From Octopus sinensis (taxonomy: Eukaryota): a stretch of 64,000 nucleotides of DNA. Location: NCBI RefSeq assembly GCF_006345805.1, contig NC_043005.1, positions 92,504,001-92,568,000 of the forward strand, read 5' to 3'. Positions 21,401 to 57,800 of this stretch are shown here, in pieces. The position numbers were made by a program, and so were the translations under genes. The first letter of the stretch is position 1, and each line of letters begins with the position of its first letter. A model generated the notes under the pieces. It was not told where the DNA came from. It did no database searches and saw only the letters and a list, made by a program, of their open reading frames with translations.

Positions 21401-24400
21401 ATCTGGTAGGTGAACTTGCAGTTTCACTATTGCAGGTGCTCTCTCATGAATTGAAATTCTTAAAATGGATGCAACTGCTTTGGACGGACCAAAATGCCTA
21501 CCCATTAAATATTGACTAATTTTGTTATCATTGAACAGCAACTTGGTCATTTCATTTCAAGGTGTACTTGATGACATACTTAATTTACCTCGCTGAGGCA
21601 ACGATTTCAATGTTGCAGTGGCATTTGAATGTTCAAATGGCGAGTTTCATTATAAAGTACAACCTATTTGTTGTTGTTTGTTTCTCCTTTCTTATGAGAT
21701 CCAACTCCTCCCATTGCAACTGATCTTTGTCTATAAAGAGATAGTCTCTCCGTCTGTTTTTCTGCCTTTTGATTAACATGATAAAGATTAATATTTTATT
21801 TGAAATAAAATAGTAATTTTCCCCTTTAAGAAAAAAACAATAGAGTACCCGTGGTTCAAAAAATATCCCATAAAAATATTGGGAGAATTTCTATCTTTCA
21901 GTCCACAGAACTTGAAAGTTGTATAAATGCTTAAGGGTAGAAATTAGAAAGTAAGAAAAAAAGAATGGACAGTGTTAGCTGGGACAACTCAGTGTTGACA
22001 TTTTCAACTTGGTTATTTTTCTTTTTTTCTCTTAAAGTGGGAAATGACTATTTTATTTGTAATCTTTATCATTTTAATCAAATGGCAGGAATGGAGCAAT
22101 GTGAAATGAAGTGTTTTGCTCAAGAACATAATGCGTTGCTCAGTCTTTGAACTGAGCCAGTGATCTCGCAATCATGAGTCCAATAGCTTGACCACTATGT
22201 CATATGTGCCTTCACTATATCTATTCAAATACTTATTTAAATTGTAAGATATGTTTTTTTTTTTTTTTCCTATTTTAGAATAAGCAAAAGAAATACACCT
22301 AAATGGAAACCTTTTTAGAATTGTAAATTGTATGTAATTTTATCTCATAGTAATCTATTTATATAGATTGTACTCGCCTCATATTCATTTTTGAATTATC
22401 TGAATGCGCGTGTATGGTTGCTTTTCACATGCAATAATGGCAATGCTGTTGTTGTTATGTTGTATGAATGCCTTCTGCTCCTCCTAACCTAGTCCTCTAA
22501 GTCCATATTGGTTGAGTCAATCTAATTTGTTCTCAGACTCTTGTATTTCTAGATGAAGGGGCGATACACGCTCTTCGTATGTTTTGAAAGACTCACAGAC
22601 GGTGATCCTTGAGTAGTAAGTATACTCTCCACAGTTTGAATACTTGAACTAGTTACACTTCTGTGGTGGGATATTGACACAAACAACACCATGTGAAAAA
22701 TGGAACGTTTTTCCATCTTTTTTTTTTTTTTTTTTTGCCTATTTTATATACTTTTAAAATAGAAAATTTTAATCTAAATTAAATTTAATCTTGTTTATTC
22801 TGTGTTTTCATGTGTTTTGGAAACATGCTGGCATCTACAAATGTTCCTCGACACTTCTAACTTGGAACCTATTTCTCTTCATATTGTTAAAGCATATCTC
22901 AGCATATATTGAAGAATGCCGATAGATTGCCTGCCCATTAACACAGTCCTCTTTCAGTTACTTTTTCTCCATTCACAGTACTTCATATATGTACTTACGG
23001 TTTTGCTATGAAGTTGCCTTTTAAAATTTAAACTTATGTTGCTATATTATGGTATATAAACAGAATTATTAGATGTTTGAAAATATTGATTATCTATTAG
23101 AGCTTAGAAGAATTAAATAGTACCTCATGTTTAGAAACGTGTAAACAGACTAATTTTGATACCTGGATGCCCCATCAAAATTCACTATTGTAATTTAAAT
23201 GTGTATTGTTTAAAAATCTTTTTTTAAATTTTTTTTACACCAGCTAAGTCTCATGGAAACACAATAGGTATAACTTAAATTTCTCATCCAGCTGTAGCTT
23301 AGTACTAATAAAAGATCATAAATTGACAGGATAGAAGCACACAAAACAAAAGACTTTAATATTTTTGTTCTACTACATTTTGAGTTCCAAGAAATTGATA
23401 AAATAAGTGCCTTGACCTATTCAGTTGATTTCCTTGAAAAAATAACCTCTGTACCTTATCAAAGGAAATTTTCACCAATATTGTAGCATTAGCTATTTCT
23501 GGCTTAACATCCAAAGAAAAATTGTCTCTTGGTTATCCCAAACACATCTTTACTAGTGAAGTTTGATTAGTGAAATATTAAACTCATAACTCTTTTTTTG
23601 AAGCTTTTCATCCCCTATGGTTAGCTCAACTAACACTGACTGGTAAATATTCTTGATATTTGTACACATTTTTGTAGGTAGCTGTTAAATATTTGCTATC
23701 ACAAAGTATTGTTCATCATGAGCAAAACCACATTATTGTGTGAATATCTTCAAAATTTGAGCTTTTTTGAGTTGAGTTAATCTAAATTAGTTTTCTCCTT
23801 ATTTGACTACTAGGTGTAATTGAGTCAAACACTATAGAGAATTCTTAACCCTTTCGTTACCAAACCGCCCGAAAAAAATTTTGGTTAATGTGACCAAGCC
23901 GCCCAAAACCGCCCGAATTTACCTATTCATATTTAAATGAGAATATCAGAGCAAATCTCTTTAGTACATTCGTGAAAACACGTATTATACTTCGTAAAGA
24001 GTTCAACTACAGTTTTGTACAAAAATCGAAGTGTAATTTTAATTCCGTGAATTTTGGGAGATATTTTTCCGAAATTTGTTCCTATTGTGTTTTCAAAATT
24101 TGTAATTCTGACAAAAAATGGATACGAATTTCATATCAAGCAGCGAGTCAGAATTCAAAGGATTTTCTACTGAAGACCTTCATAAATCTAACTCTATGAC
24201 TGAAAAAAAAAAGCACGTGGTATTTGATAATGAATCTGATGTTTCATTTTCCGAATGTGAAAACAGTGAATCCGAGAGCTCCGACAGCGATAAAGAAAAT
24301 GAATTGGCACCTGAATGGAGTGAAAATTTAAAAACTGTTTCTTTCGGTGATTTTTCTGAAGAAACTGGACCAAGTCACAATCTTTCCCAGAAGAGTAAAG

Positions 24401-27400
24401 CCTTAGACTATTTCTTTTTACTTTTTCGAATGAGCCTATTTGAAATCATTACGGCGGAAACGAACCATTACGCTAAATGTAAACAAAACGAAAGAAAGGA
24501 TAGTTAGTGGTTTCCCATAACCTTAAATGAAATTAAGACTATTTTGCCATAAATATTTTTATGGGTATCAGAAAGTTACCCAGAATAACAAATTCTATCG
24601 TGAAATTTTGTTGTATACCCAATTGAATATTAGCTAATAACCCATTTTCTATAGCGATGTTTGAACAAAATTTTAATAATTTTATATTTTGTTGAATTTA
24701 CCTGTATCTACCTGCAATTAGAGTCACTTTGTGACAAAAATTATAGTATAGAATTGGTTGAGAACATTTCATTAAATTATCTTCCAAAATTCACGTTAAT
24801 ATATTAATAAATAAAAAAGTTATAGTTGTTTAATGAAACCAGACTAAATTTATGATTACGTTAGAAATTAATTGAAACACATAAGGGGTGTATTTTGGTC
24901 AGAAATATAGTAACGAAAGGGTTAAATGCACCAGGAAAGAATTTGTTTCAGAAATACTTTTGTAAAAACTTTATAGCTTCCGTTTTAATTAAAAAGAATT
25001 AGAAATTCTGAATAGAATAGATCTTTATAGTTTATTGAAATATGGTAGGGAAAAAAAACCCCAGCTAGTTTACAAATTGTTTTTTTCTTTACTTTTAATA
25101 ATTCCAATCATTAAAGTCAATGAAAGAAATTTTAGTAAATTTTATCTTTGTAAATTGGAGAATGTCTGTCTGTTAAGACTTGAGGTGATATATTTGTTTT
25201 ATTTTAATGTTGTGGACTCTATTTTAAAAAAGAAAACCAGTTTTGGGGCCTTGTTGCTGGGATTTTAATGACTGCTTTCAGTGATTTCAGTCCTTTCTTG
25301 TAACATTTCCTTGTCTCTTTTATCTTTTTGGTTTATTTGATCTAACACAACCTTTTGTCTCTTCAGGAGGTGATAGAACTAACTCTACAGCTGCTGAACA
25401 TTGGCCCAACTTCAGGAAGTTCTAATGCTGAAGAAGGCAATGGTGAAGAAGTATCAACAAACAACACAGAAGCTGCAGAAGCAGTTCAGACAACCTGGAG
25501 TGCTGGAGATGCTTGCCAAGCTCTTTGGTCTGTAGATGGACAGTAAGTATGAAATCAATTCATTTCAAATTGCTGTAGAAACAAGATAAATTGTGTGTGT
25601 GTGTTTATATATCTATCTATCTGTCTGTGGTTGATGATGCACAGACATTCTCTCTCACTCTCTTTCTCTTTTACTTGCTCTATGAAACATTTACTAGCAC
25701 AAAACAAACACTGTCACCACTAATGTCTCTCACTCTCTCTCTCTCTCACTCACTCTCTCTTTCTATAAGAAGCAGTATAAAAGCATTTTTTCAGCCTATG
25801 ATGGTGAGCCAGACAAATTGACATTGTGGGCCGTAGTTTGGTGACCCATGATTTAGATGGTAAGTTACATGCTAATACGCTGAATGGTATACCCAAATAG
25901 TTCCTAATGAAGAATTTCTAGTTGAGACTTTGAAATGGGGGGGGGGTGATTTGAAGAAATTAAACAGTTCACAGAAAATTGGGTTTTTTTTATTGCTTGA
26001 GTGGTGTCTAATGTTGATTGTAGGAGACACAACATATTTCAGTCTTAGTAGGCTTCATCAGCTAAGTCTTCTTACACCTGCCTTGCTTAGTAGGCAGAGA
26101 TATTTACAATTAGAAAATTCATTTGACAAATTTAAGCTGACCTAATTTTTCCTTTGTAGGTATTATGAAGCAAAAATTGATGAGATATTACTTGACGGAA
26201 CATGTACTGTAACATTTGAGGGTTATGGAAACACAGACATTACACAGGTAAATATTTTGCAGAGAAAAATGAATATTCATTTGGTTTATACAAAATTTCT
26301 CATGAAATAATTTGTATCTTCTTGGATTTTCTGGTGATTTTTTTTTTTTTTATGTTGTGCTTTCTTATTTCTGTATTGCCCACAAGGGGCTAAACATAAA
26401 GAGGACAAGCAAGAACAGACAAAGATGTAAGTCGATTATATTGACGCCAGTGCGTAACTGGTACTTAATTTATCGACCCCAAAAGGATGAAAGGCAAAGT
26501 TGACCAGAATTTGAACTCGGGACATAACAGCAGACGAAATACTGCTAAGCATTTTGCCCGGTGTGCTTACGTTTCTGCCAGCTCACTGCCTTCTTTTGTA
26601 CTTTCTACAATTTGAAATTAATATTAGCTCAGCTTTATTGCTTAGCTGTATATTTATAACCATAATAGTTTATTCACAAACACTAGATTGCTGAATTTTT
26701 TCTCTAATTTTTGTTTCCCAATGCTCTAGGCAAATTTATTAAAACCATCTGATGCTGATAACGATCATGGTGTGGATGGATTGGGTCCCGAAGCCAAACG
26801 ACTTAAATCAAAGTAAGTTTATAATTATCAATCACAATTAAATTAAGATAATTAATACAATGATATTTCCTGGTAATTCTAGGTGAATAGTAAAATTCTT
26901 TGTATTGGTTTGCATTGGAATAGAGCCACTTTCATTACAGAGTTACCGGGTTGGCAAAAATGCTATTTCGTTTTTCGTAAATAGTTACGATTTTTTGTAA
27001 TGACTTTTGTCAATGTCATGATTTTTTCCTTTTGACATTTGATAGCCATTACCTCTAGCTTACATTAGAAGCAAATTGCATGTAATTTTCTTTACAGCTG
27101 TTAGTCCAGTGTCATTTTTAACATGGAGTGCAAAAACAAATATTTTCACTATATTTTGCTTTTTTATTTCCTTAAAGGCAAGAAAGCTGCTGAATCTCAC
27201 AAATATGTGGAGTTTTTAAGGTTAACAGAATGCACATATCAGAAATGGTTTTAAAATTCCATTCTGGAGATTTTTCACTCAAAGTTGACCAATGTTCTGT
27301 TCTAGTTGACCTACTGAAGTTGATGATGACCGAATCAAAGCCATAATTGAATCTGATTGTCATATAACATAATTGAATCTGATTGTCATTGCAGAGAGGT

Positions 27401-29430
27401 TAAATGTATCACACAAAACAATTGAAAATCACTTAAAATGTCTTGGACTCGTTAAGAAGTTTGATATTTGGGTTCCACATAAATTGAAAGACATTCACTT
27501 AACATAATGAATCAATATTTGTGATATGCATCTCAAATGCAATGAAATTGCCCTTATTTTTAAAGGAATCATCATTGGTGATGAAAAATGGATTGTCTAC
27601 AATAACATCAATCGAAAGCGATCATGGTCCAGGCTGAATTGCATCAAAAAATGGTTGTGCTGTCAATTTGGTGGGATTACAAAGGTGTTGTTTATTTTGA
27701 GCTGCTTCCAAGGAACCAAACAATCAATTTAGATGTTTACTGTCAACAACTAATGAAGCTGGAGGAAGCAATCAAAGAAAAATGGCCAGAATTGGCAAAT
27801 CATAAAGGAATCATGTTACAAATTTTAACATAAAGATAGGTTTTCATTTCAACTTCAGTTTTAACCCTTTTGTTAGCAAACCGCCCGAAAAAAGTTTTGG
27901 TTCATGTGACCAAACCCGCCCGTAATTACCTATTCATATTTAAATGAGAATATCAGAGCAAATCTCGTTAGTACATTTGTGAAAACATGTGATTATACTT
28001 CGTAAACAGTTCATCTACAGTTTTGTACAACTATCAACGTGTTATTTTAATTCCCTGAATTTTGGGAGATTTTTTTTTTCCACATTTTTTTCGGCATCGA
28101 TTTTTCTTCAACTTTGAAAATGGATAGGAGTTTCATGTTATCAAGCATTGATTCCGAATTTAAAGCTTTTTCAACGGAAAATAGGGAGATATCGAGAAAA
28201 AGAATGAATGAGATCTTAAAGCACGTGGTGTACAAAATAATGAATAGAATATTTTTTTATCCGTTAACCGAAAGCAGCAATTCCGAAGAAACAAATCGGA
28301 ATGAAGTAAAAAACTTTTAAAATGTTTTTATTAGCAATTTTTCTGAGGAGATAGAGTTTATCTATAGTCTTTCTTAGGAAGCGAAACCATTAGACTTTTA
28401 TTTTTTTCAGTATGCTTGTTTGGAGCGATCACTGTGGAAGCAAACTGTTACGCAGAATGTAAACAAACACAAAATCGGGGATCAAAGTTTGGAAAATTTG
28501 TGAAGCAAATACTGGGTACTGTGTGGATTTAGTTTTTATACAGGGAAACTAATGTTATTGAGCATGGCTTAGGGTACGATGTGGTCTGGAAGTTATTGTT
28601 TGAAGCGATCAATGCGGAAACAAATTTATGCAGATTGTAAACAAACACAAAATGGGGGATCAAATTTCGGAAAATTTGTGAAGTAAATACTGGGTACTGC
28701 ATGGATTTAGTTTTTATACAGGGAAAATGGTATTAGTCAGCATGGCCTAGGGAACAATGTGGTCTGGAATTTATCACTTCCATACCATAACCAGGGCCGT
28801 ATATTATTTTATGACCGATTTCTTTAGTTCAGTCAAACTTGCGGTGGATTCCAGTATTTCACTTTATTCCACCTTTATGGTACACCTGTTGTGCATAGTG
28901 ATGTGCACAATTCTTCTTTATCAAAATTTTGTTGCATACCCATTTGAATATTAGCTGATGATTCATTTTCTATGGTGATGTTTAAACAAAATTTTAATAT
29001 TTTTACCTTTTGCTGGATTTACCTGTAATTAAAGTCACTTTGAGACAAAAGTTATGCAATAGAATTGATTAAGAACCCTTTCTTTAATTATGTTCCAAAT
29101 ATCACATTAATATGTTGATAAGTAAAAAAGTTACAGTTATTTAATGAAACAAGCCTAAATTCATGATTATTTTAGAATTTAATTGAAACTCATGAGGGGT
29201 GTATTTTGGTCAGAAATATAGTAACGAAAGGGTTAAAAGAATGTAAAATGTGATATAAAAGTTGGGAATGTGCTTTCAAAATTTATATTTTGAATTTCTT
29301 AAATGTTTCACTTTATTCCATCACTTTGTTTAAAAAAATGTGGGGGAAAAATAAGGGATCAATTGTAGCATTTGCTGTAGTTTGATGTTTGATTTAAAGA
29401 AGTTGGAGGCAAAAAATCAGGTTTATATAT

Positions 29431-34919: not shown

Positions 34920-35710
34920 ATTGATGAGCCAAGTTTAATGAAATAATGGATCACTACTGCGCCAGACCACCAAACACATCATCAGCTTCTTTTGACAAAT
35001 TTTGCTTTTTGGACTGTATTTCGGTGGCTCATCTTTGTCCAACCATTGTGCTGAATGTTTACAGTTGTTGTATTGGATCCATTTCTCATCACACGTTGCA
35101 ATTTGATGAAAAAATGATTTACTTTTATGACAAGAGAGCAGCATAATGCAGGCTTCCAAATGTTGCTGTTTCTGATTTCCATTGAGTTCATGTGGAACCC
35201 ACTTATCCAACATTTTCACTTTACCAATTTGTGAGTCAATATTATTTGCTTGCTAACACCAAACAACAATAATTCACGGGCACTTTGAAATGGATCTCAC
35301 TCGACGGTGGCTTTCAGTTAATCATTATTCACCTTTGTTTCTGGTCGACTGCATTGCTCATTTGTAAGGTGAAAGTTACCAGAACGAAATTTTGCAAATC
35401 AATTTGATACTCTCTTCTGAATAATAACATTAGAATGAAATGCTCCATTAATATTCCAAGCTGTCTGTGATCCTGTATTTCCAATAAAGAACTCGTATTT
35501 CAAAACTACGAATTTCTGACTTATATATTCCTAAACAAGAATATCAGAAAACAATTTATGAATACTTTATAAAGCGCAAAATAAGTTAGAATAACGAAAT
35601 AGATGTGTCAGTTTTCTTGCAAAAAATAAAGATTGCCCAAATATAACAATGGCACAAAATGAGCAGCTGCCAAAGTTTACCTTACTACAAATTTCATATT
35701 TGATGACCTA
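34920..35710 (-). mobile_element. Degenerate mariner transposon (5' part)
   Basis: ORF 34935..35219 KWVPHELN...IATCDEKWIQYNN...WLDKDEPP; TIR tattaggtcatcaaatatgaaa at 35712-35690. Confidence 0.8.
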
Positions 35711-36069
35711 ATATATATATATATACTGTACCCCCGCTTATTCGCTGTTTGACATTTGCAGTCCTGGTTATTCATGGAATTGTAAATATCGCCCGCAAGT
35801 TTTTACGACTTCTTTTGTGACAATCTCTCTCTCTTTCACTCTCTATTATTATTATTATTATTATTATTATAGTATATATAACTGTATCTAGTTACATATA
35901 TGAAGCACAGAAACAAAATGCCAATTGATCTAAGAATTACTGGAAAGGCAAAATTCAGTCCTGTAAAACTCAAGTCCATGCAATGAAGATTATACCATAA
36001 TTAAGCACATTGGTGAGCATCATCATAGTTCATGTGCTTTGAAACCCAAAGTTTAATTTTCACTTGGTA

Positions 36070-36978
36070 GACACTGAGATGCTGAAAATGTTCCTCCTTG
36101 GTAGAACTGGCGACGAGTAAGTCATCGATATAAGCATTGACAAAGTCCAGACCACGAATGACCTCGTCCATAAACCTCTGGAATGTGCTAACAGCATGGA
36201 AAGAAATTCAAAGGAACCAAAAGGTGTAGTGACAGCAGTTTTTGGTATGCCTGGATGAGGTCAACTTTGGAAAAAATGGTGCATCCATGCAAAATGGAAA
36301 GCAAATCCTGCATAGCAGGATAGGGCATCTATCCGGAATTGTTATAGCATTTAACCTGCTGTAGTCCCCGACTGGATGAGAATCAGTAGATTCTTTTTGA
36401 ATTAAATGAAGAAGTGAAAACCAGGGGCTAGTCGAAGGATGAATAAGTCGCAGCTTCAGCATGTGGTTGAATTCAGCTTTCACAGCCTTGAGTTTGTCTA
36501 GGGGTGAATATTCTCACGTCAGGGTCACCACTTTAATGAGGTAGCCGGCATGTGGGTTGTCCGAATGGCGTGTTCTATGTTGTGGGGCTATGCATGGCAA
36601 GCAATGACGTTAAGATAGGTTCTGAATACGATATATTTATATCAACTTGAGTGGTACAGAGGCGAATGCAGGGTAGATATATACAAATATGTTATTTTGT
36701 CTGAAGGCTGCTTATATAAAACTCGTCACTGCAAGTCCAAGACATCAGGTTTGTGTGACCGTACAAGTTGAGCGTTCAGGCAAAGTGCTAATATGCCAGA
36801 GAAAGCCAGGTAAGAAGAGAGAGAATTTCGTGGTACTTCGTTTTTTATATCAACCAGCGGTAAATGCCAGCTGTTGGCATTCCTACCGGAAGTTACAGCA
36901 TATTCAGAAAATCCTGAAGCGAAGTCGGAAACACAACCTTCCTTGATCTCCCTTTCTCTCCTGTAGGGTTTCGCTACA
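36070..36978 (-). mobile_element. Ty3/gypsy remnant: putative 5' LTR, tRNA-Trp primer-binding site, RT N-terminal half
   Basis: ORF 36208..36483 KAEFNHML.L.LI.PSTSPW.S.LH....GDY..LNA.TIPDR.PI plus downstream RT frames; PBS TGGTGACCCTGACGTGAG at 36530-36513; LTR-like segment 36978-36533 starting TGTAGCG. Confidence 0.8.
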
Positions 36979-37191
36979 GTTTTTGGGCACTCAGGGATGG
37001 CATGGAAATAAAAAGAGATTCATACACTTTTTGTTAAAGACACTGTCTTTATTGTCTGCGGTAGGTATGTCATCAGAGGATCTTCATGACCCAGGCTGTC
37101 AACCAATGACGCTCTAAATACAGAAATGCGATAAGCTTTAACAAATTCCTATCATTATCTCACTTATCACGTCACAACCAAATCGACAACA

Positions 37192-37720
37192 CTACTTTCC
37201 TTCTCTTTCACATTCTCAGGCGATAAGTAAGGATTTAAAACTTTAGATTCTTCACTTTTCATTGCAATCAAACTTATAGAACCTTACAAACGAACTTTTG
37301 GTACTACTAGCAAACAGTGGTCCCGGTACACGCACTTGCGCATCCGCGCTAGCCAGTCGTAAGTAGTCGATCCTACGACTTTTTAACCCTAAACCTGACC
37401 CTAACCCTAACCTTAGTTTGTTTATAAAAATAATTTATTTACTTAGTTTAAAAAATTATTTACTTTGTTCGAAAAATATTATTTAATTTTTTTTTATATG
37501 TATTCAGCCTTTAAATACAAACATATGCGCAAGTCGTAGGATCGACTACTTACGTCTAGCTTGCGCGGATGCACGAGTGCGCGCACCGGGACCACTGTTC
37601 GCTTGTAGTACCCTACTTTCCTTCTCTTTCGCATTCTCGGGCGAAAAGTAAGGATTTAAATCTTTAGGTTCTTCACTTTTCATTGCAAACGAACTTATAG
37701 AACCTTGCAAACGAACTTTT
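37192..37720 (+). repeat. 108-bp direct repeat (37192-37299 and 37613-37720) flanking the MITE
   Basis: Ungapped alignment with 8 mismatches; both copies abut the TIRs exactly. Confidence 0.92.
37300..37612. mobile_element. MITE with about 82-bp terminal inverted repeats and internal CCCTAA-like repeats
   Basis: Arms 37300-37381 and 37531-37612 align with 9 mismatches (GGTACTAC...GTAGTACC); internal aaccctaaacctgaccctaaccctaacc. Confidence 0.85.
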
Positions 37721-37830
37721 TAACTACAAACTATAGACACATAAACATTTTCTGTTTATTGTTTTTCACTCGCCTCAAAAACAAGGGAAGTCACTCGGTT
37801 TGCGTGGCAGCAGTTACTTCCCCTACAATC

Positions 37831-37941
37831 ATGGCCACGATACAAACAGCGAAAGCTGTGATGAGAAAGAAATGCAGACACACTCTGTCTTTAATACCAG
37901 ACGAAGACAAAATCAAACAATCAGAGATCATTTCGAGAAAG
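37831..37941 (+). CDS. MTHFS: MTHFS exon 1
   Basis: ATG at 37831; 37 codons; donor GTAATA at 37942. Confidence 0.88.
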
Positions 37942-39426
37942 GTAATATTGTTTTTATATCTATGTTAGTCTCAGTTTCATAGTAATCAATAATTCTTTCG
38001 GATATTTTGCTTCTGCCTTAGACTCCTATCGGAAGAAAGAAATGGGTTTTAGTAAATCTCAAAGTCTTATCTGTTTGTTTGTTCCACTTATTTACAACAT
38101 AAGACGTGTATTGAATTACTACTACACACAGGCTTTCTTACCTCATTCCTCTCTATTTGAGATATTTTGTATTCAATTTTCTTACAATATCAATAACAAT
38201 TTCCAATTTTAATATTTAATATTTTGAGTGAGTGAAAGGGAGGGTGATTATTGTATCAGATCGTTTAGAATTTGTTTTAGTTGTTCATTTTCGCTTTGTT
38301 AAGCCTATAAAATTCTAAAATGAAAACAAACAAAAAAAAAACCAAGGATCGTCCCTAACATTTTTAATGCGAATCAAAATACCACCTGCCATCTCACTCC
38401 CCGCGAAAAAAAAAAAAAAGACATTTAGAAATATATGAATAAAACTAAAACTTCTTCGGTCGTCAAACGACGTTTACTAGATGCTGATTGATGGAGGTAA
38501 ATGTGTAGTCATGAATTCAAGGCTTACCAAGTGCAGGTTATTTCCAGTTGGTGGCGCACTTCAATAATAAAGTTTTCCAATTAGCATGGAGTGCGCGTCA
38601 AGGCTAGCTCGTATGAACTATAGGTACAGTATAGCAGACAGATTTTCATAGTTTCCGGTAACTTAATTTGACTTACAGAGTTTGGATGAGAACCTGAGAC
38701 TATTGTAGAAGCTATCTAACCAAATTACTGTGCTGTGGGGATCTACCCCAGGATGCTATGATAGCAAGGCGACGTTTTTAACTTGTCAGCTATATAATTA
38801 CATCAGTGGTTGTCAGTATTCTTTACTCTGTGGCGCATTCAGGATCAAACAAAAACATTACTGACGCACTTAACAAAGAAAGTTAAAAAGAAAAATAACT
38901 ATTTTAGAGTTAAAAATTTAGGAAAACATTTGTCTATTTGTTGGGTGTAATCAAGATTTCGTTTTAAATAGATTCTTAATAAATTGGATCCACTGTTAGC
39001 CGTCTAATTTGCAGTAAACACAAAATTAGAACGTTTGATAATAATTGTATTTGCATGTTTAGCTGAGCCTTTCGAACACTTTGTAGTTTATGCTGTATAC
39101 CTGGTTTTATTAATTGTACTTGTGTATAGCAAAATTGTGAAGAAATACGTCTTTTTCAAGACACTTAAGTATGGAATTTCTAAACTTTAAATTAAATAGT
39201 TTTTTTTAAAAATTGCAGTGCACCACTACCCTACACGACTAGATACATCAATGTAAGGAAATAGCAAACAAATAATTCTTAAACTACAATCTGTCATCGT
39301 CGTCGCTGTCGTCACGGCTGCAGAATATTGGATATGAAAGCCACAATTATTTACAACTATCACGCAATGTTAAGACAAGGAGACATAAACACTTATAAAC
39401 ACATACACATATATGCGTTTATATAT

Positions 39427-49050: not shown

Positions 49051-51307
49051 TCAAATATGAATTAGAAGTAGTGCTAGTGTTGTAAACATTATTAAACACA
49101 CATACTCAACATACAAGCTATGCTTCTTAGCTGGTAGGCTGTGATTTAGCATGGTGAGGATGACTCCCTCAAAGCACCAGGTGTTAAAACATTCAATGTT
49201 TTGAGGGAGTCATCCCCACCAAACTAAATCACACCCTACCAGCAAACAATCACAGCATGTACAGGTGAGGTGTTTGGGACAAGTTGTCTCACCTGTCTAT
49301 GACTTTCAGATGTTTTAACAGTCAGCACTTTGAGGGAGTCATCTCCACCACACTAAATCGCAGCCTACTGGCATACAAGCATAGCATGTACATTGAGTAT
49401 GTGTGTTCAATAATGTGTGTGTGTGTGCACATGTATTCCTTGCCTTGCCTTGTGTTGCCTTGGGCCCTTAAATCCATGATGGAGTCCTAAGGGCATCTCC
49501 AGGTTTGGACACAGCCAATTTCTTCCAGAAACTGAGACATACAAGCAAACTGAAATAAAAACATGTGAGAAAGGAAAGATTCTACCCCTGATACTTTATT
49601 TTTTTAACTCCTAAAAGAATGGATAGCAATGTTTACCTATGTTGGATTTGAGACCAGGGGCCCCTATGCATCAACACATGTGTACAGGCCTAGGCAAGAG
49701 TTTTTGGGGAAGACTGGCAGTTGTTCATGCATGCAAATCTCTCCACTCCACAACATTGATGTTTATTCAAAGGAAAGGACATGGGCAATGTAGCTGGCAA
49801 CTGTTAGAACAGATCAGCTCTGGAGGAACAGGTTTGTAATGAAAAGTGTTTTTGGTTTGACTGTCCAGTCTTTTCTTTTGGGAGGAGGAGCAGCAGCACA
49901 GTGTATCTAGGACTACATTATCCAGTGAACCCTTTCTTTAATAAGACAGTTGCTTGTTACTTGAAGAGGTATATGGCTTCTAAGTTTAGACGATTGAATG
50001 ATTTACATAAAAGCTTCATTGTCTAGAAGCAAATTTGAGACTAGAAACAAATTTGTTTGGATTCTATATAGATATGCCAAAAACAACAATAACAAAACAA
50101 AAAAAAATTACCAAAAGAACTTGATGTTCTTGCATTAATCAATTAATGCACTCATGTTCTCCTCTCTTCTTAATCTCCCACTTTCTCTCTCTCTCTCTCT
50201 TTTTGCTCTTCTCACTTATTCTCCTTTCTCTATTTCATGTTCTAAAGTTGATGAATCTACCAGAATTTGAAGCCAGTAAACGAATCTCAATCTACCTGAG
50301 TACTTCTGATGAGGTGCGGACAGAATCAATTATGAAGAAAATACTGGCTTCCAATAAGACTTGTTTCATTCCACATTATAGTGGCACAAGCATGAAAATG
50401 GTAGCACTAAAGTCTCTAGAAGATTATGAAAATCTTCCATTGACTAATTGGAATATAAAGCAACCTAGTGATGATGATGTTCGCACTGATGCTCTAGAAA
50501 CTGGTAAGAATGCCATTTAGATTATTATTATCATTTTATGGAAAATGTAATTTATGTAATCGATCCATCTATCTTCTTAGCCCACTATTTGTGCAAGGGC
50601 CTTGTGGATAGAGCCCTCAGGCACCTCCTCCACAGGATCCTATCAGAAACAGCCATCATTAGACTTTCCTGCTGGATTTCTAAGAGTGACCAGCTATGGA
50701 TATTATATAACCATCTTGCTTTTGGTCTACCCCTAAATCTCCTGTCACTTGGATTGGCTTGAAGAATCCATATTGCAATTCTTTCCTGTGACATTCTAAT
50801 AATCTATATATAAGTGTGTATATGAAATAAGATATATATATGTATGTGGCATGATATGATGTGTATAGCCATAAATTTTCTGTATTTATTAATCCATTTG
50901 CTACCATATGTCCATCAAAATGCCTATGCTTCAAATAATTTTGAAAATACGAGGAATTTTGTCGGAAATTTAAAAAAGTTTAGATGACATTAAAACAGGA
51001 TACTTTGTATCATAGAACTAGAGGTGGTCTCTAATGAATATTTTCTTCTTTTCCAGGTGGCTTAGACCTAATTGTGATGCCTGGGCTTGCATTCTCCTTG
51101 GCTGGAGCTCGTCTTGGGCGAGGCAAAGGCTACTATGATGCCTACCTGAAAAAATGCTATGAATATGGTAACAAACCTATTACAATTGCTTTGTGTTTCC
51201 ATCAAATGTTATTTGATAACATCCCTGTTATACCAGGTTCCGATATGTTTGTCAACAAGGTTATTTACCCAGATGAAGCAGATCTCATGGAGAGCAGAAC
51301 TAGATGA
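37831..51307 (+). CDS. MTHFS: 5-formyltetrahydrofolate cyclo-ligase, join(37831..37941,50248..50503,51057..51307)
   Basis: [14 protein letters not shown]...[11 protein letters not shown] / [24 protein letters not shown]...L...KTCFIPHY....MKMV.L.S...[10 protein letters not shown]...R.DALETG / [28 protein letters not shown], the family ATP-binding signature; phases 0 and 1 consistent. Confidence 0.95.
39419..39496. repeat. (TA)n microsatellite
   Basis: Directly visible; similar tracts at 40017-40064, 51350-51675, 61590-61790, 63880-64000. Confidence 0.9.
41245..41630 (+). mobile_element. tRNA-derived SINE, near full length, in MTHFS intron 1
   Basis: Same head, body and tail as 12100-12495. 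Confidence 0.8.
44139..44219. repeat. (CT)n microsatellite
   Basis: Directly visible; a (GA)n tract is also at 3596-3639. Confidence 0.95.
46430..47700 (+). mobile_element. RTE-clade LINE 3' fragment (RT plus C-terminal region)
   Basis: ORFs 46453..46752 ([12 protein letters not shown]...[13 protein letters not shown]...VGVHQGSVL), ELHYADNLV, 46865..47242 with a Cys-rich insert ([15 protein letters not shown]), and 47380..47712. Confidence 0.85.
49130..49372. repeat. Foldback: one left arm, two right arms
   Basis: 49130-49192 is reverse-complementary to both 49200-49243 and 49310-49372. Confidence 0.8.
50248..50503 (+). CDS. MTHFS: MTHFS exon 2
   Basis: Long pyrimidine tract, acceptor ctaaag at 50247, donor GTAAG at 50504. 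Confidence 0.9.
50560..50790 (-). mobile_element. RTE-like LINE 3' end relic in MTHFS intron 2
   Basis: Minus frame [11 protein letters not shown] and [18 protein letters not shown] resemble an RTE C-terminus. Confidence 0.5.
51057..51307 (+). CDS. MTHFS: MTHFS exon 3 (terminal)
   Basis: Acceptor ttccag at 51056; [10 protein letters not shown]...[10 protein letters not shown]...ESRTR, TGA at 51305-51307. Confidence 0.93.
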
Positions 51308-51561: not shown

Positions 51562-52035
51562 CATATATATATTGACTACATATATATGTGTGTGTGTGTG
51601 TATGTAATATATATACATGTGTGTATGTTTACTACATATATATATATACATATATGTATATGTATATATATATATAAAGGAAAGAATAAATGGAGTCTAA
51701 AGGAAGAGGGACAGCTGTTTAGTGACCACTACACATGCTTTGATACAACATAGATCTACATATTATACAGGATTTAAATTAAGTAACAGTTTACCTGTAT
51801 AGTAAGACCTAGTTGTATCTCTTCAGGTGATATACAATTGCTGTCTCTGTAAGTAAATGTTTGATTTCGATGCTATTACATCCAAGTAGCTCTTTTTTTA
51901 TTTTTCACACACGAGGAATGCCTAAGCCTAGAATTGGTAGTATACCATAATACTGCTGGCTATCTGGTAATTCTAAGGGTGAACGAGCTCTATTTTGTAC
52001 CCTAATGCATTCTTAATGGAATACACCTCAACTAC

Positions 52036-52070
<35 letters not shown>

Positions 52071-52178
52071 GGTATACATATATATGTATATGTGTGTAAA
52101 TGTGCTTGTATGTAAATGAGTATCCATATATCTGATTACATGTATGTGCATGTCTATATATGTGTTTGTGCACATATG

Positions 52179-52219
<41 letters not shown>

Positions 52220-52256
52220 GTATGTATATGTATAGATATGTATGTATGTATGTATG

Positions 52257-52288
<32 letters not shown>

Positions 52289-52675
52289 TATAATATATAT
52301 ATATTATATATATATATATAAGTATATATGTGTGTGTTTGTATATATATGTGTGTGTGTGTGTATATGTATATATATATATATATATAGTTTTTGTATTT
52401 GGTTTGCAAGATTCTTTATGTGAATTTATGTGTTGAAGTATATTTTGTTGTATCTGAGGAGAATCGTTCTGTATGCACATGCACACTGACACACACAGAT
52501 GTGCACAAACAAACAAAAAGAACGCAGCTCTGATAACTGACAGAGTCAAGGACTATTGGAGAGGTTGCAAGAAGCAACAAAAATTTTAGAAAAAATAAAT
52601 AAGTAAATGAGTGGAAATCAAACTGGTGAGTGTGTTAATTAATAAGGCACTTAAAAACAGAATGACTCCCAAGAC

Positions 52676-52718
<43 letters not shown>

Positions 52719-52805
52719 TATTAGAGACAAAACCACTATTTTGCAAAACAAACAAGGAAAGACTTAATCAATACATAAAATTTTAATAAATAGTCAAAAA
52801 AACCG

Positions 52806-52848
52806 CCACTACAATCGTTTCTTGTCTTGATCGACAATCTTCAGGTGG
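52806..52848 (-). ncRNA. Minimal type I hammerhead ribozyme motif
   Basis: Minus strand CCAC-CTGAAGA-TTGTC(gatcaa)GACAA-GAAA-CGATTG-TA-GTGG: stem I 4 bp, intact CUGANGA and GAAA, 5-bp stem II, near-palindromic stem III, GUA cleavage triplet. Confidence 0.75.
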
Positions 52849-53541
52849 ACTATGCATATGTATGTGTGCATCAGTATGTACTTGTATAGGATATATGCAG
52901 GCATACATACATACCTACATGTGTGTGTATACATACATATACATATGTATATATATATAAAGGAAAGAATAAATGGAGTCTAAAGGAAGAGGGACAGCTG
53001 TTTAGTGACCACTACACATGCTTTGATACAACATAGATCTACATATTATACAGGATTTAAATTAAGTAACAGTTTACCTGTATAGTAAGACCTAGTTGTA
53101 TCTCTTCAGGTGATATACAATTGCTGTCTCTGTAAGTAAATGTTTGATTTCGATGCTATTACATCCAAGTAGCTCTTTTTTTATTTTTCACACACGAGGA
53201 ATGCCTAAGCCTAGAATTGGTAGTATACCATAATACTGCTGGCTATCTGGTAATTCTAAGGGTGAACGAGCTCTATTTTGTACCCTAATGCATTCTTAAT
53301 GGAATACACCTCAACTACGTATATATATATATATAATATATATATATATATATGTAGGTATACATATATATGTATATGTGTGTAAATGTGCTTGTATGTA
53401 AATGAGTATCCATATATCTGATTACATGTATGTGCATGTCTATATATGTGTTTGTGCACATATGTATGTATATATATATAATATATATATATATATATGT
53501 ATATGTATGTATATGTATAGATATGTATGTATGTATGTATG

Positions 53542-53595
<54 letters not shown>

Positions 53596-53975
53596 ATATT
53601 ATATATATATATAAGTATATATGTGTGTGTTTGTATATATATGTGTGTGTGTGTGTATATGTATATATATATAATATATATATATATAGTTTTTGTATTT
53701 GGTTTGCAAGATTCTTTATGTGAATTTATGTGTTGAAGTATATTTTGTTGTATCTGAGGAGAATCGTTCTGTATGCACATGCACACTGACACACACAGAT
53801 GTGCACAAACAAACAAAAAGAACGCAGCTCTGATAACTGACAGAGTCAAGGACTATTGGAGAGGTTGCAAGAAGCAACAAAAATTTTAGAAAAAATAAAT
53901 AAGTAAATGAGTGGAAATCAAACTGGTGAGTGTGTTAATTAATAAGGCACTTAAAAACAGAATGACTCCCAAGAC

Positions 53976-54148: not shown

Positions 54149-54404
54149 ACTATGCATATGTATGTGTGCATCAGTATGTACTTGTATAGGATATATGCAG
54201 GCATACATACATACCTACATGTGTGTGTATACATACATATACATATGTATATATATATAACTAAAAATAAGGGTGTCTGAGAGACACCACCATGCCGAAA
54301 TAGCAGTCAAATCCCTGACTCTAAAAACCACCTTAAATGTTCATATCGCACCATGAGATAAGACAGATGGACAAAATAGACTAGCAAAAAGATATTACTG
54401 AATA

Positions 54405-54463
54405 ATTCAAGATCCTGGATTTCTAGCTTTGCTTTAAATAAGCTTTGCCGTCATCAGTTGAAT
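54405..54463 (-). ncRNA. Type I hammerhead ribozyme motif with intact core
   Basis: Minus strand ATTCAA-CTGATGA-CGGCAAAGCTTATTTAAAGCAAAGCTA-GAAA-TCCAGGA-TC-TTGAAT: 6-bp stem I, palindromic stem III, AUC triplet; base of stem II is imperfect (C.A). Confidence 0.65.
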
Positions 54464-54818
54464 ATATCAGAGCACATAAATACAAATATATATATGCAGA
54501 ACAAACGTTATACTTACATATACGAACGTCCATACATACATATATATGCACGTATGTACACGATATGGTCAAAATAAACACCGCAGTGAATATAGTGACG
54601 AATTATATAAATTTATAAATAAAGATAATATCGATATTTAAATATCGATATTATCAAGTGGCCAGCATGGGAAAAAATACCATACAAAGGTAATAATTTT
54701 TTATAACTAAAAATAAGGGTGTACATACGTGCATATATATGTATGTATGGACGTTCATATATGTAAGTATAACGTTTGTTCTGTATATATATATATTTGT
54801 ATTTATGTGCTCTGATAT

Positions 54819-54877
54819 ATTCAACTTATGACGGCAAAGCTTATTTAAAGCAAAGCTAGAAATCCAGGATCTTGAAT
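54819..54877 (+). ncRNA. Hammerhead motif with core substitution CTTATGA (probably inactive)
   Basis: Inverted copy of 54405-54463 with G5 changed to T. Confidence 0.55.
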
Positions 54878-57800
54878 TATTCAGTAATATCTTTTTGCTA
54901 GTCTATTTTGTCCATCTGTCTTATCTCATGGTGCGATATGAACATTTAAGGTGGTTTTTAGAGTCAGGGATTTGACTGCTATTTCGGCATGATGGTGTCT
55001 CTCAGACACCCTTATTTTTAGTTGTAAAAAATTATTACCTTTGTATGGTATTTTTTCCCATGCTGGCCACTTGATAATATCGATATTTAAATATCGATAT
55101 TATCCTTATTTATAAATATATATATGTATATATAACTGTATGTGTATATAACTGAACCATACTAGTAATAGAATAGTATATATGGAATTTTTGTTGTTTT
55201 TATCTTTTTGAATTTATTCTAGGTTTTGTTTAATTTTCCTTTTTAAATTTATTTGTTTTAATTTTTCACAATGAAAAAGAAAATCAAAACAACCAGCAGT
55301 TTAGCAGAACATTTTTTTTAATGGAGAATAATTTGGATAAATAAATTGTTTTTTTTTACTGCATGTATGATCAATTCATTGTTTAAAATATTGTATGTTT
55401 AATTATGTATATTGCATTAGTCTGTGTTTATGTAAGCATGCATCACTCCTGCTAATGGTTCTTTAACCCTGTGTAATGTGAGGATGTTAAAATGATGTGT
55501 TGTATCAAACCATTCTCGATGTCTCACAAAGTGATGTAATCAGCTGCATCAAGTGTAACTTTTGTTCTTTGTTTTTTTTTTCTTGCCATCATCATCAGGT
55601 GGGTCTGTGGTTTTAGCCTGATGGAGCAGAGCTATGATCAAAAGCTTACCTGCCATGCCCACCCTTTCTCTTTTTCTTCAGGTATTGTATATCTAATGAT
55701 ACGTTATAGGTGCAGATATAACTGTTGGCTTCTCAACCATGTGTGGGTTAGTTTCACTGTGCTACTAATTGGGCTAGTGTCTTTTACTATAACCCCAGGC
55801 TAACCAATGCTTTTTGAGTGGAGTTTTAAAGACAAATCTGTAAGCGGCTGAGATTTGCTGTTGAGCTTTCGTTTTAGTTCTCAAAAAATCTGCACCTGTT
55901 GAGGGATAACTCTGTCACTGAACAGGATGCTTGTCCCTTGTAGAATTTGTCATCTGTAGAAATTAAAGTCACCACATGGTACAGTGGTTAGGGTGTAGGG
56001 TTCACAGTTGTTAGGTTGTGGGGTCAATTCTTGAACCTGGCTGTGCATTGTGTTGTTGAGCAACACACTTCATTTCATGTTATGTCAAAATACTTAGCAG
56101 AAAATTAGTATCTGCAGGTTAAATCTGCTACAGAATGGTGTTCTGTTCAGAGGGCACAGGGGAGTAGTCTTGTATGTTATACCTAAATACCTTCTAAATC
56201 TGGACATGCTCCAGTGTCATGTACCTGTAGGTATGAGGGATGCAGACTATATGCAAAAGTAGATGACAAGGGACCACAACAAGTTGCAAGCTACTTTTCT
56301 TTAGAAATTCTGTGTAACATATGCAAGCATGGGAAAACAGACATAAAATGAGGCTGCTGTTGCTGATGAGAATGATGGCAACTGCATGGCACCTGGGGCA
56401 AGTGTCTTCTACTATATATATATACCCTCGGGCCTGCTAAAGCTTTGTGAGTGGATTTGGTAGAAAGAAACTTAAAGAAGTCTGTCGTATATATGTATAT
56501 GTTTGTGTGTCTGTGTTTGTCCCCCTGCCATCACTTGACAACCAATGTTGGTATGTTTACGTCCCTGTAAATTAGTGGTTTGGCAAAACAGACTGATAGA
56601 ATAACTACTAGGCTTATAAAGAATAAGTCCTGGGGTTGATTAGTTCGACTAAAGGTGGTGCTCCAGCATGGCCATAGTCAAATGACTGAAACAAGCAAAA
56701 GACTTTACATACGTACATATGTATATATTGTAGAGTACTGTTGTAATTCCAACATTGAGAAAACTACAAATTCTAAGGGGAAACAGAGGAGTTGTCATAG
56801 GACTCTGGCTGGGAATATTCAAGTTGGCAGATGTTGTAGAGTCAGGTGAAAGTTGGTAAGTGGGAGATGTGGACAGAGTGACGCAATACAAATATATATT
56901 CTTCCTTCTTTTCTCTTTCTCTCTCAAAAATACACACACACACACACTTTCTTAATGTTCCTCTTTTACTACACATTGAAAGTTTTTGATATGTTTATCA
57001 CTATATAGTGAAGCTACAAAATTAATTCAAAACAATGTGAATAATTATAACAATATTGGTTTCAGCACATAATTTCAAATCAAAATTCTTGCAAAACAAA
57101 TTATAAAAAAGGATGATGTTTATTTTTGGAATATCTTTTTTAAAAAAAATTTTCTTTGATTTCTTATGTATTTCATTGATTTAGTAATTTTTCATTGCAA
57201 AAGTTTTATTTTAATTTTCATCTTTATTTTTAGTTCACTTTTTCTCCATATTTTTTCTTCGATGCTGAGTTTTTGTAAAAGAAATTCATATAATTCCAGC
57301 CTTTAGAACACTAAAATTAGAATACTGTAATAAATATCTGTCACTCAAACAGTGAACTAATTTCTTTAGTTAATTTGCATGCTTAGAGACTGATGTTTCT
57401 TCGCAGGCAAGAGAGGACAACTATAGGCATGTCATGGTTTATTAAATCTCATCAGTGTAACAAAGCCTAACTAAGCCTGCAGATCAAATAACTAAGAGAC
57501 TATGAGCGATGGCTAAAAGAATATTGAGCTTTATTTGATAACCAGTTGATCTAGCAAGCGGGTACTCATATCAGTGAGGGGGGGCTGGTGTGCATTGATG
57601 CTGTCGAGAGGTAGGCCCCGAAACGGCGTGCATTCTTTCCTGATGACCCCATACAATTGCTGGCTTCCAGTATGCGGAGTTTTTGACTGTTAGCACTTGC
57701 ATGTGCAAGTTGTTTGGAAGACATCTAAATTGAAAAGATAAGAAGATACAACAAAGACGGCTTTCAATCTAAAGGGATCTTAACAGACAAAGGCATAGCT

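What the first reader, a model, noticed from the sequence alone, without database searches (positions are those of the whole stretch)
37192..37720. Long-TIR MITE flanked by a 108-bp direct duplication immediately upstream of MTHFS
Seen: DR(108)-TIR(82)-core-TIR(82)-DR(108). The DRs (8 mismatches) abut the TIRs exactly, there is no short TSD at the junctions, and the second DR ends 110 bp before the ATG. Established: cut-and-paste TSDs are about 2-11 bp; very long TSDs are known from some non-LTR elements such as rotifer R9. Inference: either an unusual transposition mechanism with a very wide staggered cut, or unequal crossover between two offset insertions. Either way the likely proximal promoter was duplicated.
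Basis: partly seen in the sequence, partly recalled or inferred. Interest (0 to 1): 0.7.

Follow-up and report, generated by a model that had tools for sequence, protein, structure and literature searches.

The report
Foldback insert with 108-bp flank duplication
Upstream of the octopus MTHFS gene, a 313-bp hairpin-shaped DNA insert sits between two copies of a 108-bp host segment that is single-copy in a related octopus; this is most likely an old one-off transposition accident of a kind already known, not a new mechanism.

Summary
The DRs match at 100/108 and the TIRs at 73/82. Both junctions abut exactly, there is no short TSD, and the ATG lies 110 nt after DR2.

The window is Octopus sinensis. 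O. vulgaris, an independent assembly, has the same structure. O. bimaculoides has the two flanks joined through a single copy of the segment and no insert, so the 108-bp unit is host DNA and not part of the element. Duplication and insertion are present or absent together.

DR-DR divergence (7.4%) roughly equals O. sinensis-O. bimaculoides divergence (about 7-8.5%), and TIR-arm divergence outside CpG is similar. The event is therefore old and fixed.

No second copy of the insert could be found, but no octopus genome is searchable with these tools. "MITE family" therefore remains untested.

Best explanation: one aberrant insertion whose two ends joined target positions 108 bp apart, either as a wide stagger or as a hybrid-element event between sister or homologous duplexes. 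Precedents include HERV-K long TSDs (61-450 bp) and flanking duplications made by P and Ac/hAT elements.

The only block conserved with Argonauta (52 nt before the ATG) was not duplicated. Interest is low to moderate.

The parts
37192..37299 (+). DR1, upstream copy of the duplicated 108-bp host segment
   Evidence: 100/108 identical to DR2. Orthologous to a single-copy segment in O. bimaculoides, L002 ~5789-5890.
37300..37381 (+). Left terminal inverted repeat (82 nt, tip GGTACTAC), CpG-rich
   Evidence: 73/82 complementary to 37531-37612. 4 of the 9 mismatches are CpG transitions (read directly).
37382..37530 (+). AT-rich core (loop) of the insert, non-coding
   Evidence: No significant similarity to the reconstructed empty site.
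37385..37414 (+). Telomere-like hexamer tract (AACCCT-like x5) next to the inner end of the left TIR
   Evidence: (CCCTAA)4 with up to 3 mismatches matches only here in the window (37387-37410, 2 mismatches); 0 of 100 shuffles give a match.
37531..37612 (+). Right terminal inverted repeat (82 nt, tip GTAGTACC)
37613..37720 (+). DR2, downstream copy of the duplicated host segment; ends 110 nt before the ATG
37779..37830 (+). Proximal upstream block conserved from Octopus to Argonauta; not duplicated
   Evidence: Only part upstream of the ATG that aligns to the Argonauta hians locus L003.
37831..37941 (+). MTHFS exon 1 (37 codons, phase 0, GT donor at 37942)
50248..50503 (+). MTHFS exon 2
   Evidence: tblastn and splice sites.
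51057..51305 (+). MTHFS exon 3, including the stop codon

Best explanation
A single old insertion event occurred in the common ancestor of O. sinensis and O. vulgaris, at about or soon after the split from the O. bimaculoides lineage. A 313-bp foldback (MITE-like, cut-and-paste type) element was joined by its two exact tips to target positions 108 bp apart.

There are two ways this could have happened:
(a) Both strand transfers hit the same duplex with a 108-nt stagger, and the two single-stranded stretches were filled in.
(b) It was a hybrid-element (alternative) transposition. One end stayed at its original junction and the other end, taken from the sister or homologous copy, inserted 108 bp away.

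Both routes give flank-DR-element-DR-flank with exact junctions and no visible short TSD.

Shown: the architecture, the single-copy empty site, the age, and the absence of local templating. Inferred: that a transposase made the joints, and that the element belongs to a mobile family.

Since then the copy has drifted neutrally. It pushes everything upstream of DR2 a further 421 bp from MTHFS and places a very stable hairpin 219 nt before the ATG.
For: - Exact abutment of DRs and TIR tips, with no filler and no loss of tip symmetry.
- O. bimaculoides has one copy of the segment, no insert, and collinear flanks on both sides.
- At all 8 DR1/DR2 mismatches O. bimaculoides carries one of the two states, in interleaved order. 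Three substitutions plus a 15-nt indel separate it from both DRs. It therefore looks like the unduplicated ancestor and not a DR1xDR2 recombinant.
- O. vulgaris shares the structure, so it is real and fixed.
- DR-DR divergence is 7.4%, and TIR-arm divergence outside CpG is 6.1% against 5.6% for the DRs outside CpG. The arms and the DRs therefore started to diverge at about the same time.
- The insert is not copied from the neighbourhood.
- Precedents: HERV-K insertions with validated 111-bp and 250-bp TSDs and pre-integration alleles (PMC5488345). Alternative transposition of Ac/hAT and P elements makes flank duplications that start exactly at element ends, including repeats of 116-118 bp (PMC3744419).
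Against: - No second copy of the element was seen, so its mobility is unproven. The family's normal TSD, transposase and superfamily are unknown.
- The TIR tip GGTACTAC matches no superfamily signature I can name.
- The TIR arms appear to have been nearly identical at the time of the event. That also fits a palindrome made de novo during repair.
- The ancestral right edge reads GAACTTTT/TAAC, a LINE-endonuclease-like nick site. That hints at a different source for one of the nicks.
- The event is about as old as the O. bimaculoides split, so loss in O. bimaculoides by early DR-DR recombination cannot be excluded.
Confidence: 0.55

Rival explanations
1. Break repair, not transposition. Two nicks on opposite strands 108 nt apart gave a double-strand break with long complementary overhangs. 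Both overhangs were filled in and the ends were ligated by end joining to a free 313-bp palindromic DNA fragment, either an excised element or a snap-back product.
For: Nearby opposite-strand nicks followed by fill-in and NHEJ are an established route to tandem duplications (PMC8355091). The insert is not locally templated. The arms seem to have been near-identical at the time of the event. A telomere-like tract inside the core hints at an earlier break-repair history. The same 600 bp also carries independent rearrangements in O. bimaculoides.
Against: End joining usually nibbles ends or adds bases. Here both junctions are exact and the two tips are symmetric to the last base. The experimentally documented duplications are mostly under 100 bp and lack a 313-bp insert.
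Confidence: 0.15
2. Unequal crossover between two alleles or chromatids that each carried the same element, inserted 108 bp apart in the same orientation.
For: It gives exactly DR-element-DR with exact junctions and hides both short TSDs (inference from the geometry). The ACTAC pentamer of the TIR tip also occurs at the left DR edge and 2 nt past the right DR edge. Both occurrences are absent from O. bimaculoides. They could be traces of earlier insertions at both positions.
Against: It needs two independent insertions within 108 bp, a heterozygote, a crossover within 313 bp, and fixation. The ACTAC observation is post hoc. No footprint structure is recognisable in the 15-nt lineage-specific segment.
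Confidence: 0.1
3. Replication template switching (FoSTeS/MMBIR). The nascent strand left the locus at the right DR edge, copied an ectopic palindromic sequence, and returned 108 bp upstream.
For: Duplication-insertion-duplication is a typical product of this process. A possible 2-nt microhomology (AC) exists at the right junction, since repeat finder extends the DR to 111 nt. Palindromes stall forks.
Against: Entry into and exit from the ectopic template would have to coincide exactly with the two symmetric TIR tips. The microhomology is at chance level. No source locus was found.
Confidence: 0.07
4. Target-primed reverse transcription of a hairpin RNA by a LINE or Penelope-like machinery, with second-strand cleavage 108 nt away. 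This would resemble R9 or L1 long TSDs, or the 'retro-DNAs' of primates.
For: The reconstructed target reads 5'-GAACTTTT/TAAC-3' at the right DR edge. The T-run is on the 3'-OH side and the geometry is right for TPRT. Penelope-like copies (RT plus GIY-YIG) lie in the window. O. bimaculoides has a retroposon-like insertion with a 13-nt TSD 500 bp away. Retro-mobilised DNA-transposon sequences are described (PMC11195612).
Against: There is no poly(A) or 3' tail and no 5' truncation. Both TIR tips are intact and symmetric, whereas retro-DNAs lack TIRs. No ribozyme or known RNA family matches; only sub-threshold long-hairpin MIR models hit, and they hit any palindrome.
Confidence: 0.05
5. Coincidence. 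An older 108-bp tandem duplication existed, and an ordinary insertion later landed exactly on its junction.
For: Nothing specific. It cannot be excluded by dating, because all parts have similar divergence.
Against: It requires a hit on 1 of about 216 positions and an element that makes no TSD. O. bimaculoides shows neither the duplication nor the insert.
Confidence: 0.03

Closest known systems
Flanking duplications from alternative transposition of cut-and-paste elements (P-element hybrid element insertion; Ac/Ds and hAT reversed-ends or sister-chromatid transposition)
   Same: Host sequence is duplicated in direct orientation, starting exactly at a transposon end. The length is arbitrary and no extra short TSD is visible at the junction. 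Small natural examples (116-118 bp) are reported in maize (PMC3744419).
   Different: The maize RET products carry an element copy at the start of each repeat, whereas here a single element lies between the repeats. That is the hybrid-element-insertion geometry, which I state from my own knowledge of Preston et al. 1996 and Gray et al. 1996; those papers are not held in the library. Transposase, family and activity are unknown for the octopus insert.
Rare long TSDs of HERV-K (HML-2) insertions
   Same: An element that normally makes a short TSD is flanked by duplications of 61-450 bp. A 111-bp case has a pre-integration allele, and there is the same caveat that TSD x TSD recombination can recreate an 'empty' site (PMC5488345).
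   Different: That is a retroviral integrase with LTR ends. Here the insert is a 313-bp non-coding foldback with 82-nt TIRs.
MITEs and foldback elements
   Same: Small, non-coding, long TIRs, strong hairpin, inserted near the 5' end of a gene, with a presence/absence difference between related species.
   Different: There is no short fixed-length TSD, and multi-copy status has not been demonstrated.
Long TSDs of non-LTR elements (rotifer R9, occasional L1)
   Same: TSD on the order of 100 bp, and a T-rich nick-like site at one edge.
   Different: No RT or EN, no 3' tail or poly(A), and TIRs are present. R9 makes its long TSD at every copy, in a specific rDNA site (my own knowledge of Gladyshev and Arkhipova 2009).
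KolobokP LTDR-INT-LTDR elements of molluscs
   Same: Direct repeats flank an internal region in a mollusc genome.
   Different: The LTDRs are 450 or 660 bp, belong to the element and have their own TIRs (PMC9587614). Here the repeat is host sequence that is single-copy at the orthologous site.
Tandem duplications from adjacent opposite-strand nicks
   Same: The inter-nick segment is duplicated by fill-in of both overhangs (PMC8355091).
   Different: Those products are plain tandem duplications with little or no insert.

Membership tests
MITE (non-autonomous cut-and-paste DNA transposon) | Terminal inverted repeats reaching the exact ends of the insert | tested here: met
   82-nt TIRs, 73/82 complementary, from the first to the last base of the insert.
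MITE (non-autonomous cut-and-paste DNA transposon) | Small and non-coding | tested here: met
   313 bp. Every frame has stops. No protein hit at E<=10.
MITE (non-autonomous cut-and-paste DNA transposon) | Short TSD of superfamily-specific length or sequence | tested here: not met
   The bases flanking the tips (CTTTT| and |CTACT) are not a repeat. The only flank repeat is 108 bp.
MITE (non-autonomous cut-and-paste DNA transposon) | Many related copies in the genome | not testable with these tools
   No copy in the window, L001-L003, JGI metagenomes, IMG/VR, plasmids or phages. No octopus genome is searchable by DNA. ORFs of this locus are not in the protein collection. A bona fide retroposon-like insert in O. 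bimaculoides also has no second copy in the sample.
MITE (non-autonomous cut-and-paste DNA transposon) | Empty orthologous site in a relative | tested here: met
   O. bimaculoides L002 ~5705-5925: flanks joined through one copy of the segment.
Insertion with aberrantly long TSD or flanking duplication (HERV-K long-TSD type; hybrid-element or alternative transposition type) | Direct repeats of host origin abut both element ends exactly | tested here: met
Insertion with aberrantly long TSD or flanking duplication (HERV-K long-TSD type; hybrid-element or alternative transposition type) | Pre-integration state has a single copy of the repeat | tested here: met
   O. bimaculoides. The interleaved ancestral states at the 8 DR1/DR2 differences argue against a late DR x DR recombinant. 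An early recombinant cannot be excluded.
Insertion with aberrantly long TSD or flanking duplication (HERV-K long-TSD type; hybrid-element or alternative transposition type) | Other copies of the same family have the normal short TSD | not testable with these tools
   No other copies are accessible.
Non-LTR retroposon inserted by TPRT (R9-like or L1-like long TSD) | 3' tail or poly(A), or LINE-derived 3' end; frequent 5' truncation | tested here: not met
   The insert ends in symmetric TIR tips with no A-rich or microsatellite tail at either junction.
Non-LTR retroposon inserted by TPRT (R9-like or L1-like long TSD) | T-rich first-strand nick site at the TSD edge | tested here: inconclusive
   The ancestral right edge reads GAACTTTT/TAAC with the correct polarity. 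This is a single site in AT-rich DNA.
LTR/TRIM-like or KolobokP-like element whose direct repeats belong to the element | The direct repeat is element sequence, found with the element elsewhere and absent from the empty site | tested here: not met
   The repeat is present once, in place, in O. bimaculoides without the insert. There are no TG..CA ends, no purine tract before DR2, no TSD outside the DRs, and no TIRs within the DR.
miRNA or other known structured RNA | Score at or above the Rfam gathering threshold | tested here: not met
   The best hit is MIR7723 at 71 bits against a gathering score of 200. The unrelated O. bimaculoides palindrome gets similar hits, so these reflect any long hairpin.

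The most novel reading that the evidence does not exclude
The insert belongs to an octopod foldback-element family whose integration machinery regularly joins its two ends about 100 bp apart, roughly ten helical turns. One possible way is by acting across a nucleosome, or by two independent nicking events. Every copy would then carry a TSD of about 100 bp. That would be a new class of TIR-element integration.
Probability: 0.05. Interest if true: 0.75.

Novelty: new member of a known kind. Interest (0 to 1): 0.28.

Why it matters
This is a clean, datable natural example in a cephalopod: filled site in two species and empty site in a third. It shows an element insertion that duplicated about 100 bp of flanking host DNA right next to a gene start.

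Such events show how mobile or palindromic DNA can create small tandem duplications of regulatory sequence. If other copies had the same long duplication, it would point to an undescribed integration mode. As a single case it adds to known aberrant-transposition products.

For MTHFS itself the effect is probably small. The deeply conserved 52 nt before the ATG were untouched.

Tried and rejected
1. Looking for other copies of the element:
- Sensitive blastn of TIR, core and DR against the window and the three orthologous loci found only the element itself and its O. vulgaris orthologue.
- Two exact-pattern scans of JGI metagenome contigs found nothing.
- A 15-mer scan of IMG/VR gave 18 hits, none extending beyond 15-24 nt, so they are chance matches.
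- Plasmid and phage collections gave no match.
- A six-frame 'peptide' query built from both TIRs, run against the 5.8-billion-protein collection, gave no hit at E<=10. That negative says nothing about copy number, because ORFs of this very locus are not on record there.
- A LINE/Penelope RT query meant to collect many octopus loci for sampling returned only one octopus protein, so the sampling was abandoned.

2. Local templating of the insert. The apparent 17-nt similarity between the TIR/core junction and the DR2/flank junction (D3) is at chance level: 79 of 500 shuffles scored as well.

3. Known RNA. Only sub-threshold long-hairpin MIR models hit, and they also hit the unrelated O. bimaculoides palindrome.

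4. LTR/TRIM or KolobokP reading of the direct repeats. Rejected because the repeat is single-copy host sequence at the empty site.

5. Reading TA, GTAC or TWA as a hidden short TSD inside the TIR tips. None gives matching direct flanks.

6. Replitron and Helitron variable-length TSDs. I read the paper and it is not relevant: those elements have no TIRs and make only short variable-length TSDs.

7. Argonauta as an outgroup for the DR. Nothing aligns upstream of 37779, so the 15-nt indel at the left DR edge could not be polarised.

Full report
**Observation**

Reading 36900-38100 and running the repeat finder and blastn against the whole window confirm the structure exactly.
- A 108-nt direct repeat lies at 37192-37299 and 37613-37720, with 100/108 identical (E=4e-42).
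- It flanks an 82-nt inverted repeat at 37300-37381 and 37531-37612, with 73/82 complementary (E=1.6e-26).
- The inverted repeat encloses a 149-nt AT-rich core.
- The direct repeats touch the inverted-repeat tips (GGTACTAC / GTAGTACC) with no spare base. The bases next to the tips do not form a short duplication.
- Folded as single-stranded DNA, the insert gives -85 kcal/mol, z=-15.
- Neither the repeat nor the insert occurs anywhere else in the 64-kb window.
- I scanned 33 inverted-repeat structures in the window, the O. bimaculoides locus and the Argonauta locus. This is the only one with abutting flank repeats of 12 nt or more.

**Gene and species**

tblastn with a remembered human MTHFS sequence, used only as a lead, located exons 2 and 3. 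Splice sites give exons 37831-37941, 50248-50503 and 51057-51305. The 205-aa product is identical to O. sinensis XP_029640695.1, differs by one residue from O. vulgaris, and is 92% identical to Argonauta hians. The window is therefore O. sinensis.

**Orthologous loci**

I fetched the MTHFS loci of O. vulgaris (L001), O. bimaculoides (L002) and A. hians (L003).
- O. vulgaris has the same DR-TIR-core-TIR-DR with 3 differences in 561 nt. That matches the 0.56% substitution divergence of the surrounding region. The structure is therefore real, shared and drifting neutrally.
- O. bimaculoides has no insert. Its forward sequence runs from the left flank through one copy of the segment into the right flank.
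- Argonauta aligns only from 37779 to the ATG and into exon 1.

**Polarity and age** (alignment A1)
- At each of the 8 DR1/DR2 mismatches, O. bimaculoides has one of the two states.
- Three changes are on DR1, two of them CpG decay. Five are on DR2, one of them specific to O. sinensis.
- The order along the segment is interleaved. O. bimaculoides therefore looks like the unduplicated ancestor and not a late DR1 x DR2 recombinant.
- Three substitutions and a 15-nt indel at the left edge separate O. bimaculoides from both DRs.
- DR1-DR2 divergence is 7.4%. O. sinensis-O. bimaculoides substitution divergence in collinear non-coding HSPs is about 6-9%, pooled 8.5% including a few repeat HSPs.
- The duplication is therefore about as old as that species split, with a wide error on 8 events. 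An early loss in O. bimaculoides by DR x DR recombination cannot be formally excluded. The HERV-K literature raises the same caveat (PMC5488345).
- The TIR arms differ at 9/82 positions, and 4 of these are CpG transitions. Outside CpG the arms differ by 6.1%, against 5.6% for the DRs. The arms were therefore near-identical when the DRs were identical.

**What the insert is**
- It is non-coding and not copied from nearby sequence.
- It matches no Rfam family above threshold. The sub-threshold plant MIR hits are generic for palindromes, because the unrelated O. bimaculoides palindrome gets them too.
- It matches nothing in metagenome, viral, plasmid or phage collections.
- Its core carries a telomere-like (CCCTAA-like) tract that is unique in the window.
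- Whether it is one copy of a repeat family could not be tested. No octopus genome is searchable by DNA here. The protein-space trick is uninformative because ORFs of this locus are not in that collection. A classical retroposon-like insert in O. bimaculoides likewise has no second copy in the roughly 140-kb sample.

**Mechanism**

The exact, symmetric tips and exact junctions point to end-defined joining, that is, a transposase-type reaction. They do not look like ragged end joining or template switching. Two established routes give flank-DR-element-DR-flank with no visible short TSD:
1. The two ends join the same duplex with a very wide stagger, followed by fill-in. Rare long TSDs of 61-450 bp, including a validated 111-bp case, are documented for HERV-K (PMC5488345).
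2. Alternative transposition uses element ends from sister or homologous copies. This is hybrid element insertion in P elements and reversed-ends or sister-chromatid transposition in Ac/hAT. It produces flank duplications that begin exactly at element ends, with natural maize examples of 116-118 bp (PMC3744419). The single-element geometry of P-element products is from my own knowledge of Preston et al. 1996, which is not held in the library.

I give these two together about 0.55.

Rivals:
- Capture of a free palindromic fragment at a break made by two opposite-strand nicks with fill-in (PMC8355091): 0.15.
- Unequal crossover between two offset insertions: 0.10.
- Replication template switching: 0.07.
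- TPRT of a hairpin RNA: 0.05. This is suggested only by the GAACTTTT/TAAC target edge and by nearby Penelope-like elements.
- Chance insertion at the junction of an older duplication: 0.03.

**Promoter claim**

The TSS is unknown. The only upstream block conserved as far as Argonauta is 37779-37830, downstream of DR2 and not duplicated. The duplicated segment differs from O. bimaculoides at about the background rate (6-8 of 93 positions), so there is no sign of constraint on it. A transcript starting in DR1 would carry a -85 kcal/mol hairpin in its leader. By inference, the working start is more likely at or after DR2.

**Comparison and verdict**

The structure works like known aberrant-transposition products, and I file it as a new example of that kind. 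Membership in a MITE family fails one tested feature (short TSD), and the decisive feature (copy number) could not be tested. It is not an LTR/TRIM or KolobokP-type element (PMC9587614), not a recognisable retroposon, and not a known RNA. The reading that would make it novel is a family that always makes duplications of about 100 bp. The evidence does not exclude this, but no data support it (probability 0.05). Interest: 0.28.

Noticed in passing
L002 5490-5911 (O. bimaculoides, orthologous MTHFS upstream region): There is a perfect palindrome here: 209-nt arms, 100% complementary, 4-nt spacer. The forward arm is the normal upstream sequence, including the single copy of the 108-bp segment. 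The inverted arm replaces about 19 nt of upstream sequence. It is either a very recent fold-back duplication or an assembly artefact. Either way, the same 600 bp is rearranged independently in two lineages.
   Followed up: partly
L002 ~5147-5460: This is an O. bimaculoides-specific insertion of about 300 bp with an A-rich tail, flanked by a 13-nt duplication (TATTKTCCGCGGK). It looks like a SINE or retroposon. ARAGORN finds no tRNA, and there is no second copy in the sample. The site is single-copy in O. sinensis at 37049-37062.
   Followed up: partly
window 37385-37414: A telomere-like hexamer tract (AACCCT AAACCT GACCCT AACCCT AACCTT) lies inside the insert core, right after the left TIR. 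It is unique in the window, and 0 of 100 shuffles give a match. Its origin is unexplained.
   Followed up: partly
window 37191-37195, 37303-37307, 37723-37727 (and its reverse complement at 37605-37609): The pentamer ACTAC of the TIR tip also sits at the left DR edge and 2 nt beyond the right DR edge of the reconstructed target. Both target occurrences are absent from O. bimaculoides: one lies in a 15-nt lineage-specific segment, and the other reads ACAAC there. This is a post-hoc observation. It could be chance, a target preference, or traces of earlier insertions.
   Followed up: partly
window ~37185-37199: A 15-nt segment (GACAACACTACTTTC or a shifted equivalent) is present in O. sinensis and O. 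vulgaris at the left DR edge and absent from O. bimaculoides. Whether it is an insertion or a deletion could not be polarised.
   Followed up: partly
window 7560-10367 (+) and 297-1686 (-): Two copies of a retroelement with RT ORFs lie here. The forward copy is followed by an ORF with a GIY-YIG nuclease domain (Pfam E=5e-5), which marks it as Penelope-like. A 106-nt inverted repeat (89%) lies at 9893-10145.
   Followed up: partly
window 54256-55124: A complex inverted duplication (A-B-A'-B') lies here, with 240-nt arms 99% complementary and 119-nt arms 97% complementary. It has no flanking direct repeat.
   Followed up: partly
window 51632-53973: A tandem duplication of about 1.3 kb lies just downstream of the last MTHFS exon, in TA/TG microsatellite-rich DNA. 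It shows 300-nt blocks at 100% and 97% identity, spaced 1283-1300 nt apart.
   Followed up: no
window 23845-24926 and 27861-29237: Two copies about 4 kb apart of a repeat that starts TTAACCCTTT (81-93% identical). An adjacent ORF at 24118-24507 has no Pfam hit. The TTAA+CCC start suggests a piggyBac-like element, but that reading rests on memory and was not tested.
   Followed up: no
window 34935-35219 (-) and 36001-36483 (-): A mariner-type transposase fragment (Pfam Transposase_1, E=1e-7) and a weak RT fragment (E=4e-4, below the Pfam cut-off) lie within 2.5 kb upstream of the insert. The MTHFS upstream region is TE-rich.
   Followed up: partly
L002 whole locus: In O. bimaculoides the MTHFS gene range is 49.5 kb, with several annotated isoforms. 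A 1247-aa gene model on the same strand spans the entire 61-kb locus, so MTHFS may be nested in a larger gene or fused to one in the annotation.
   Followed up: no
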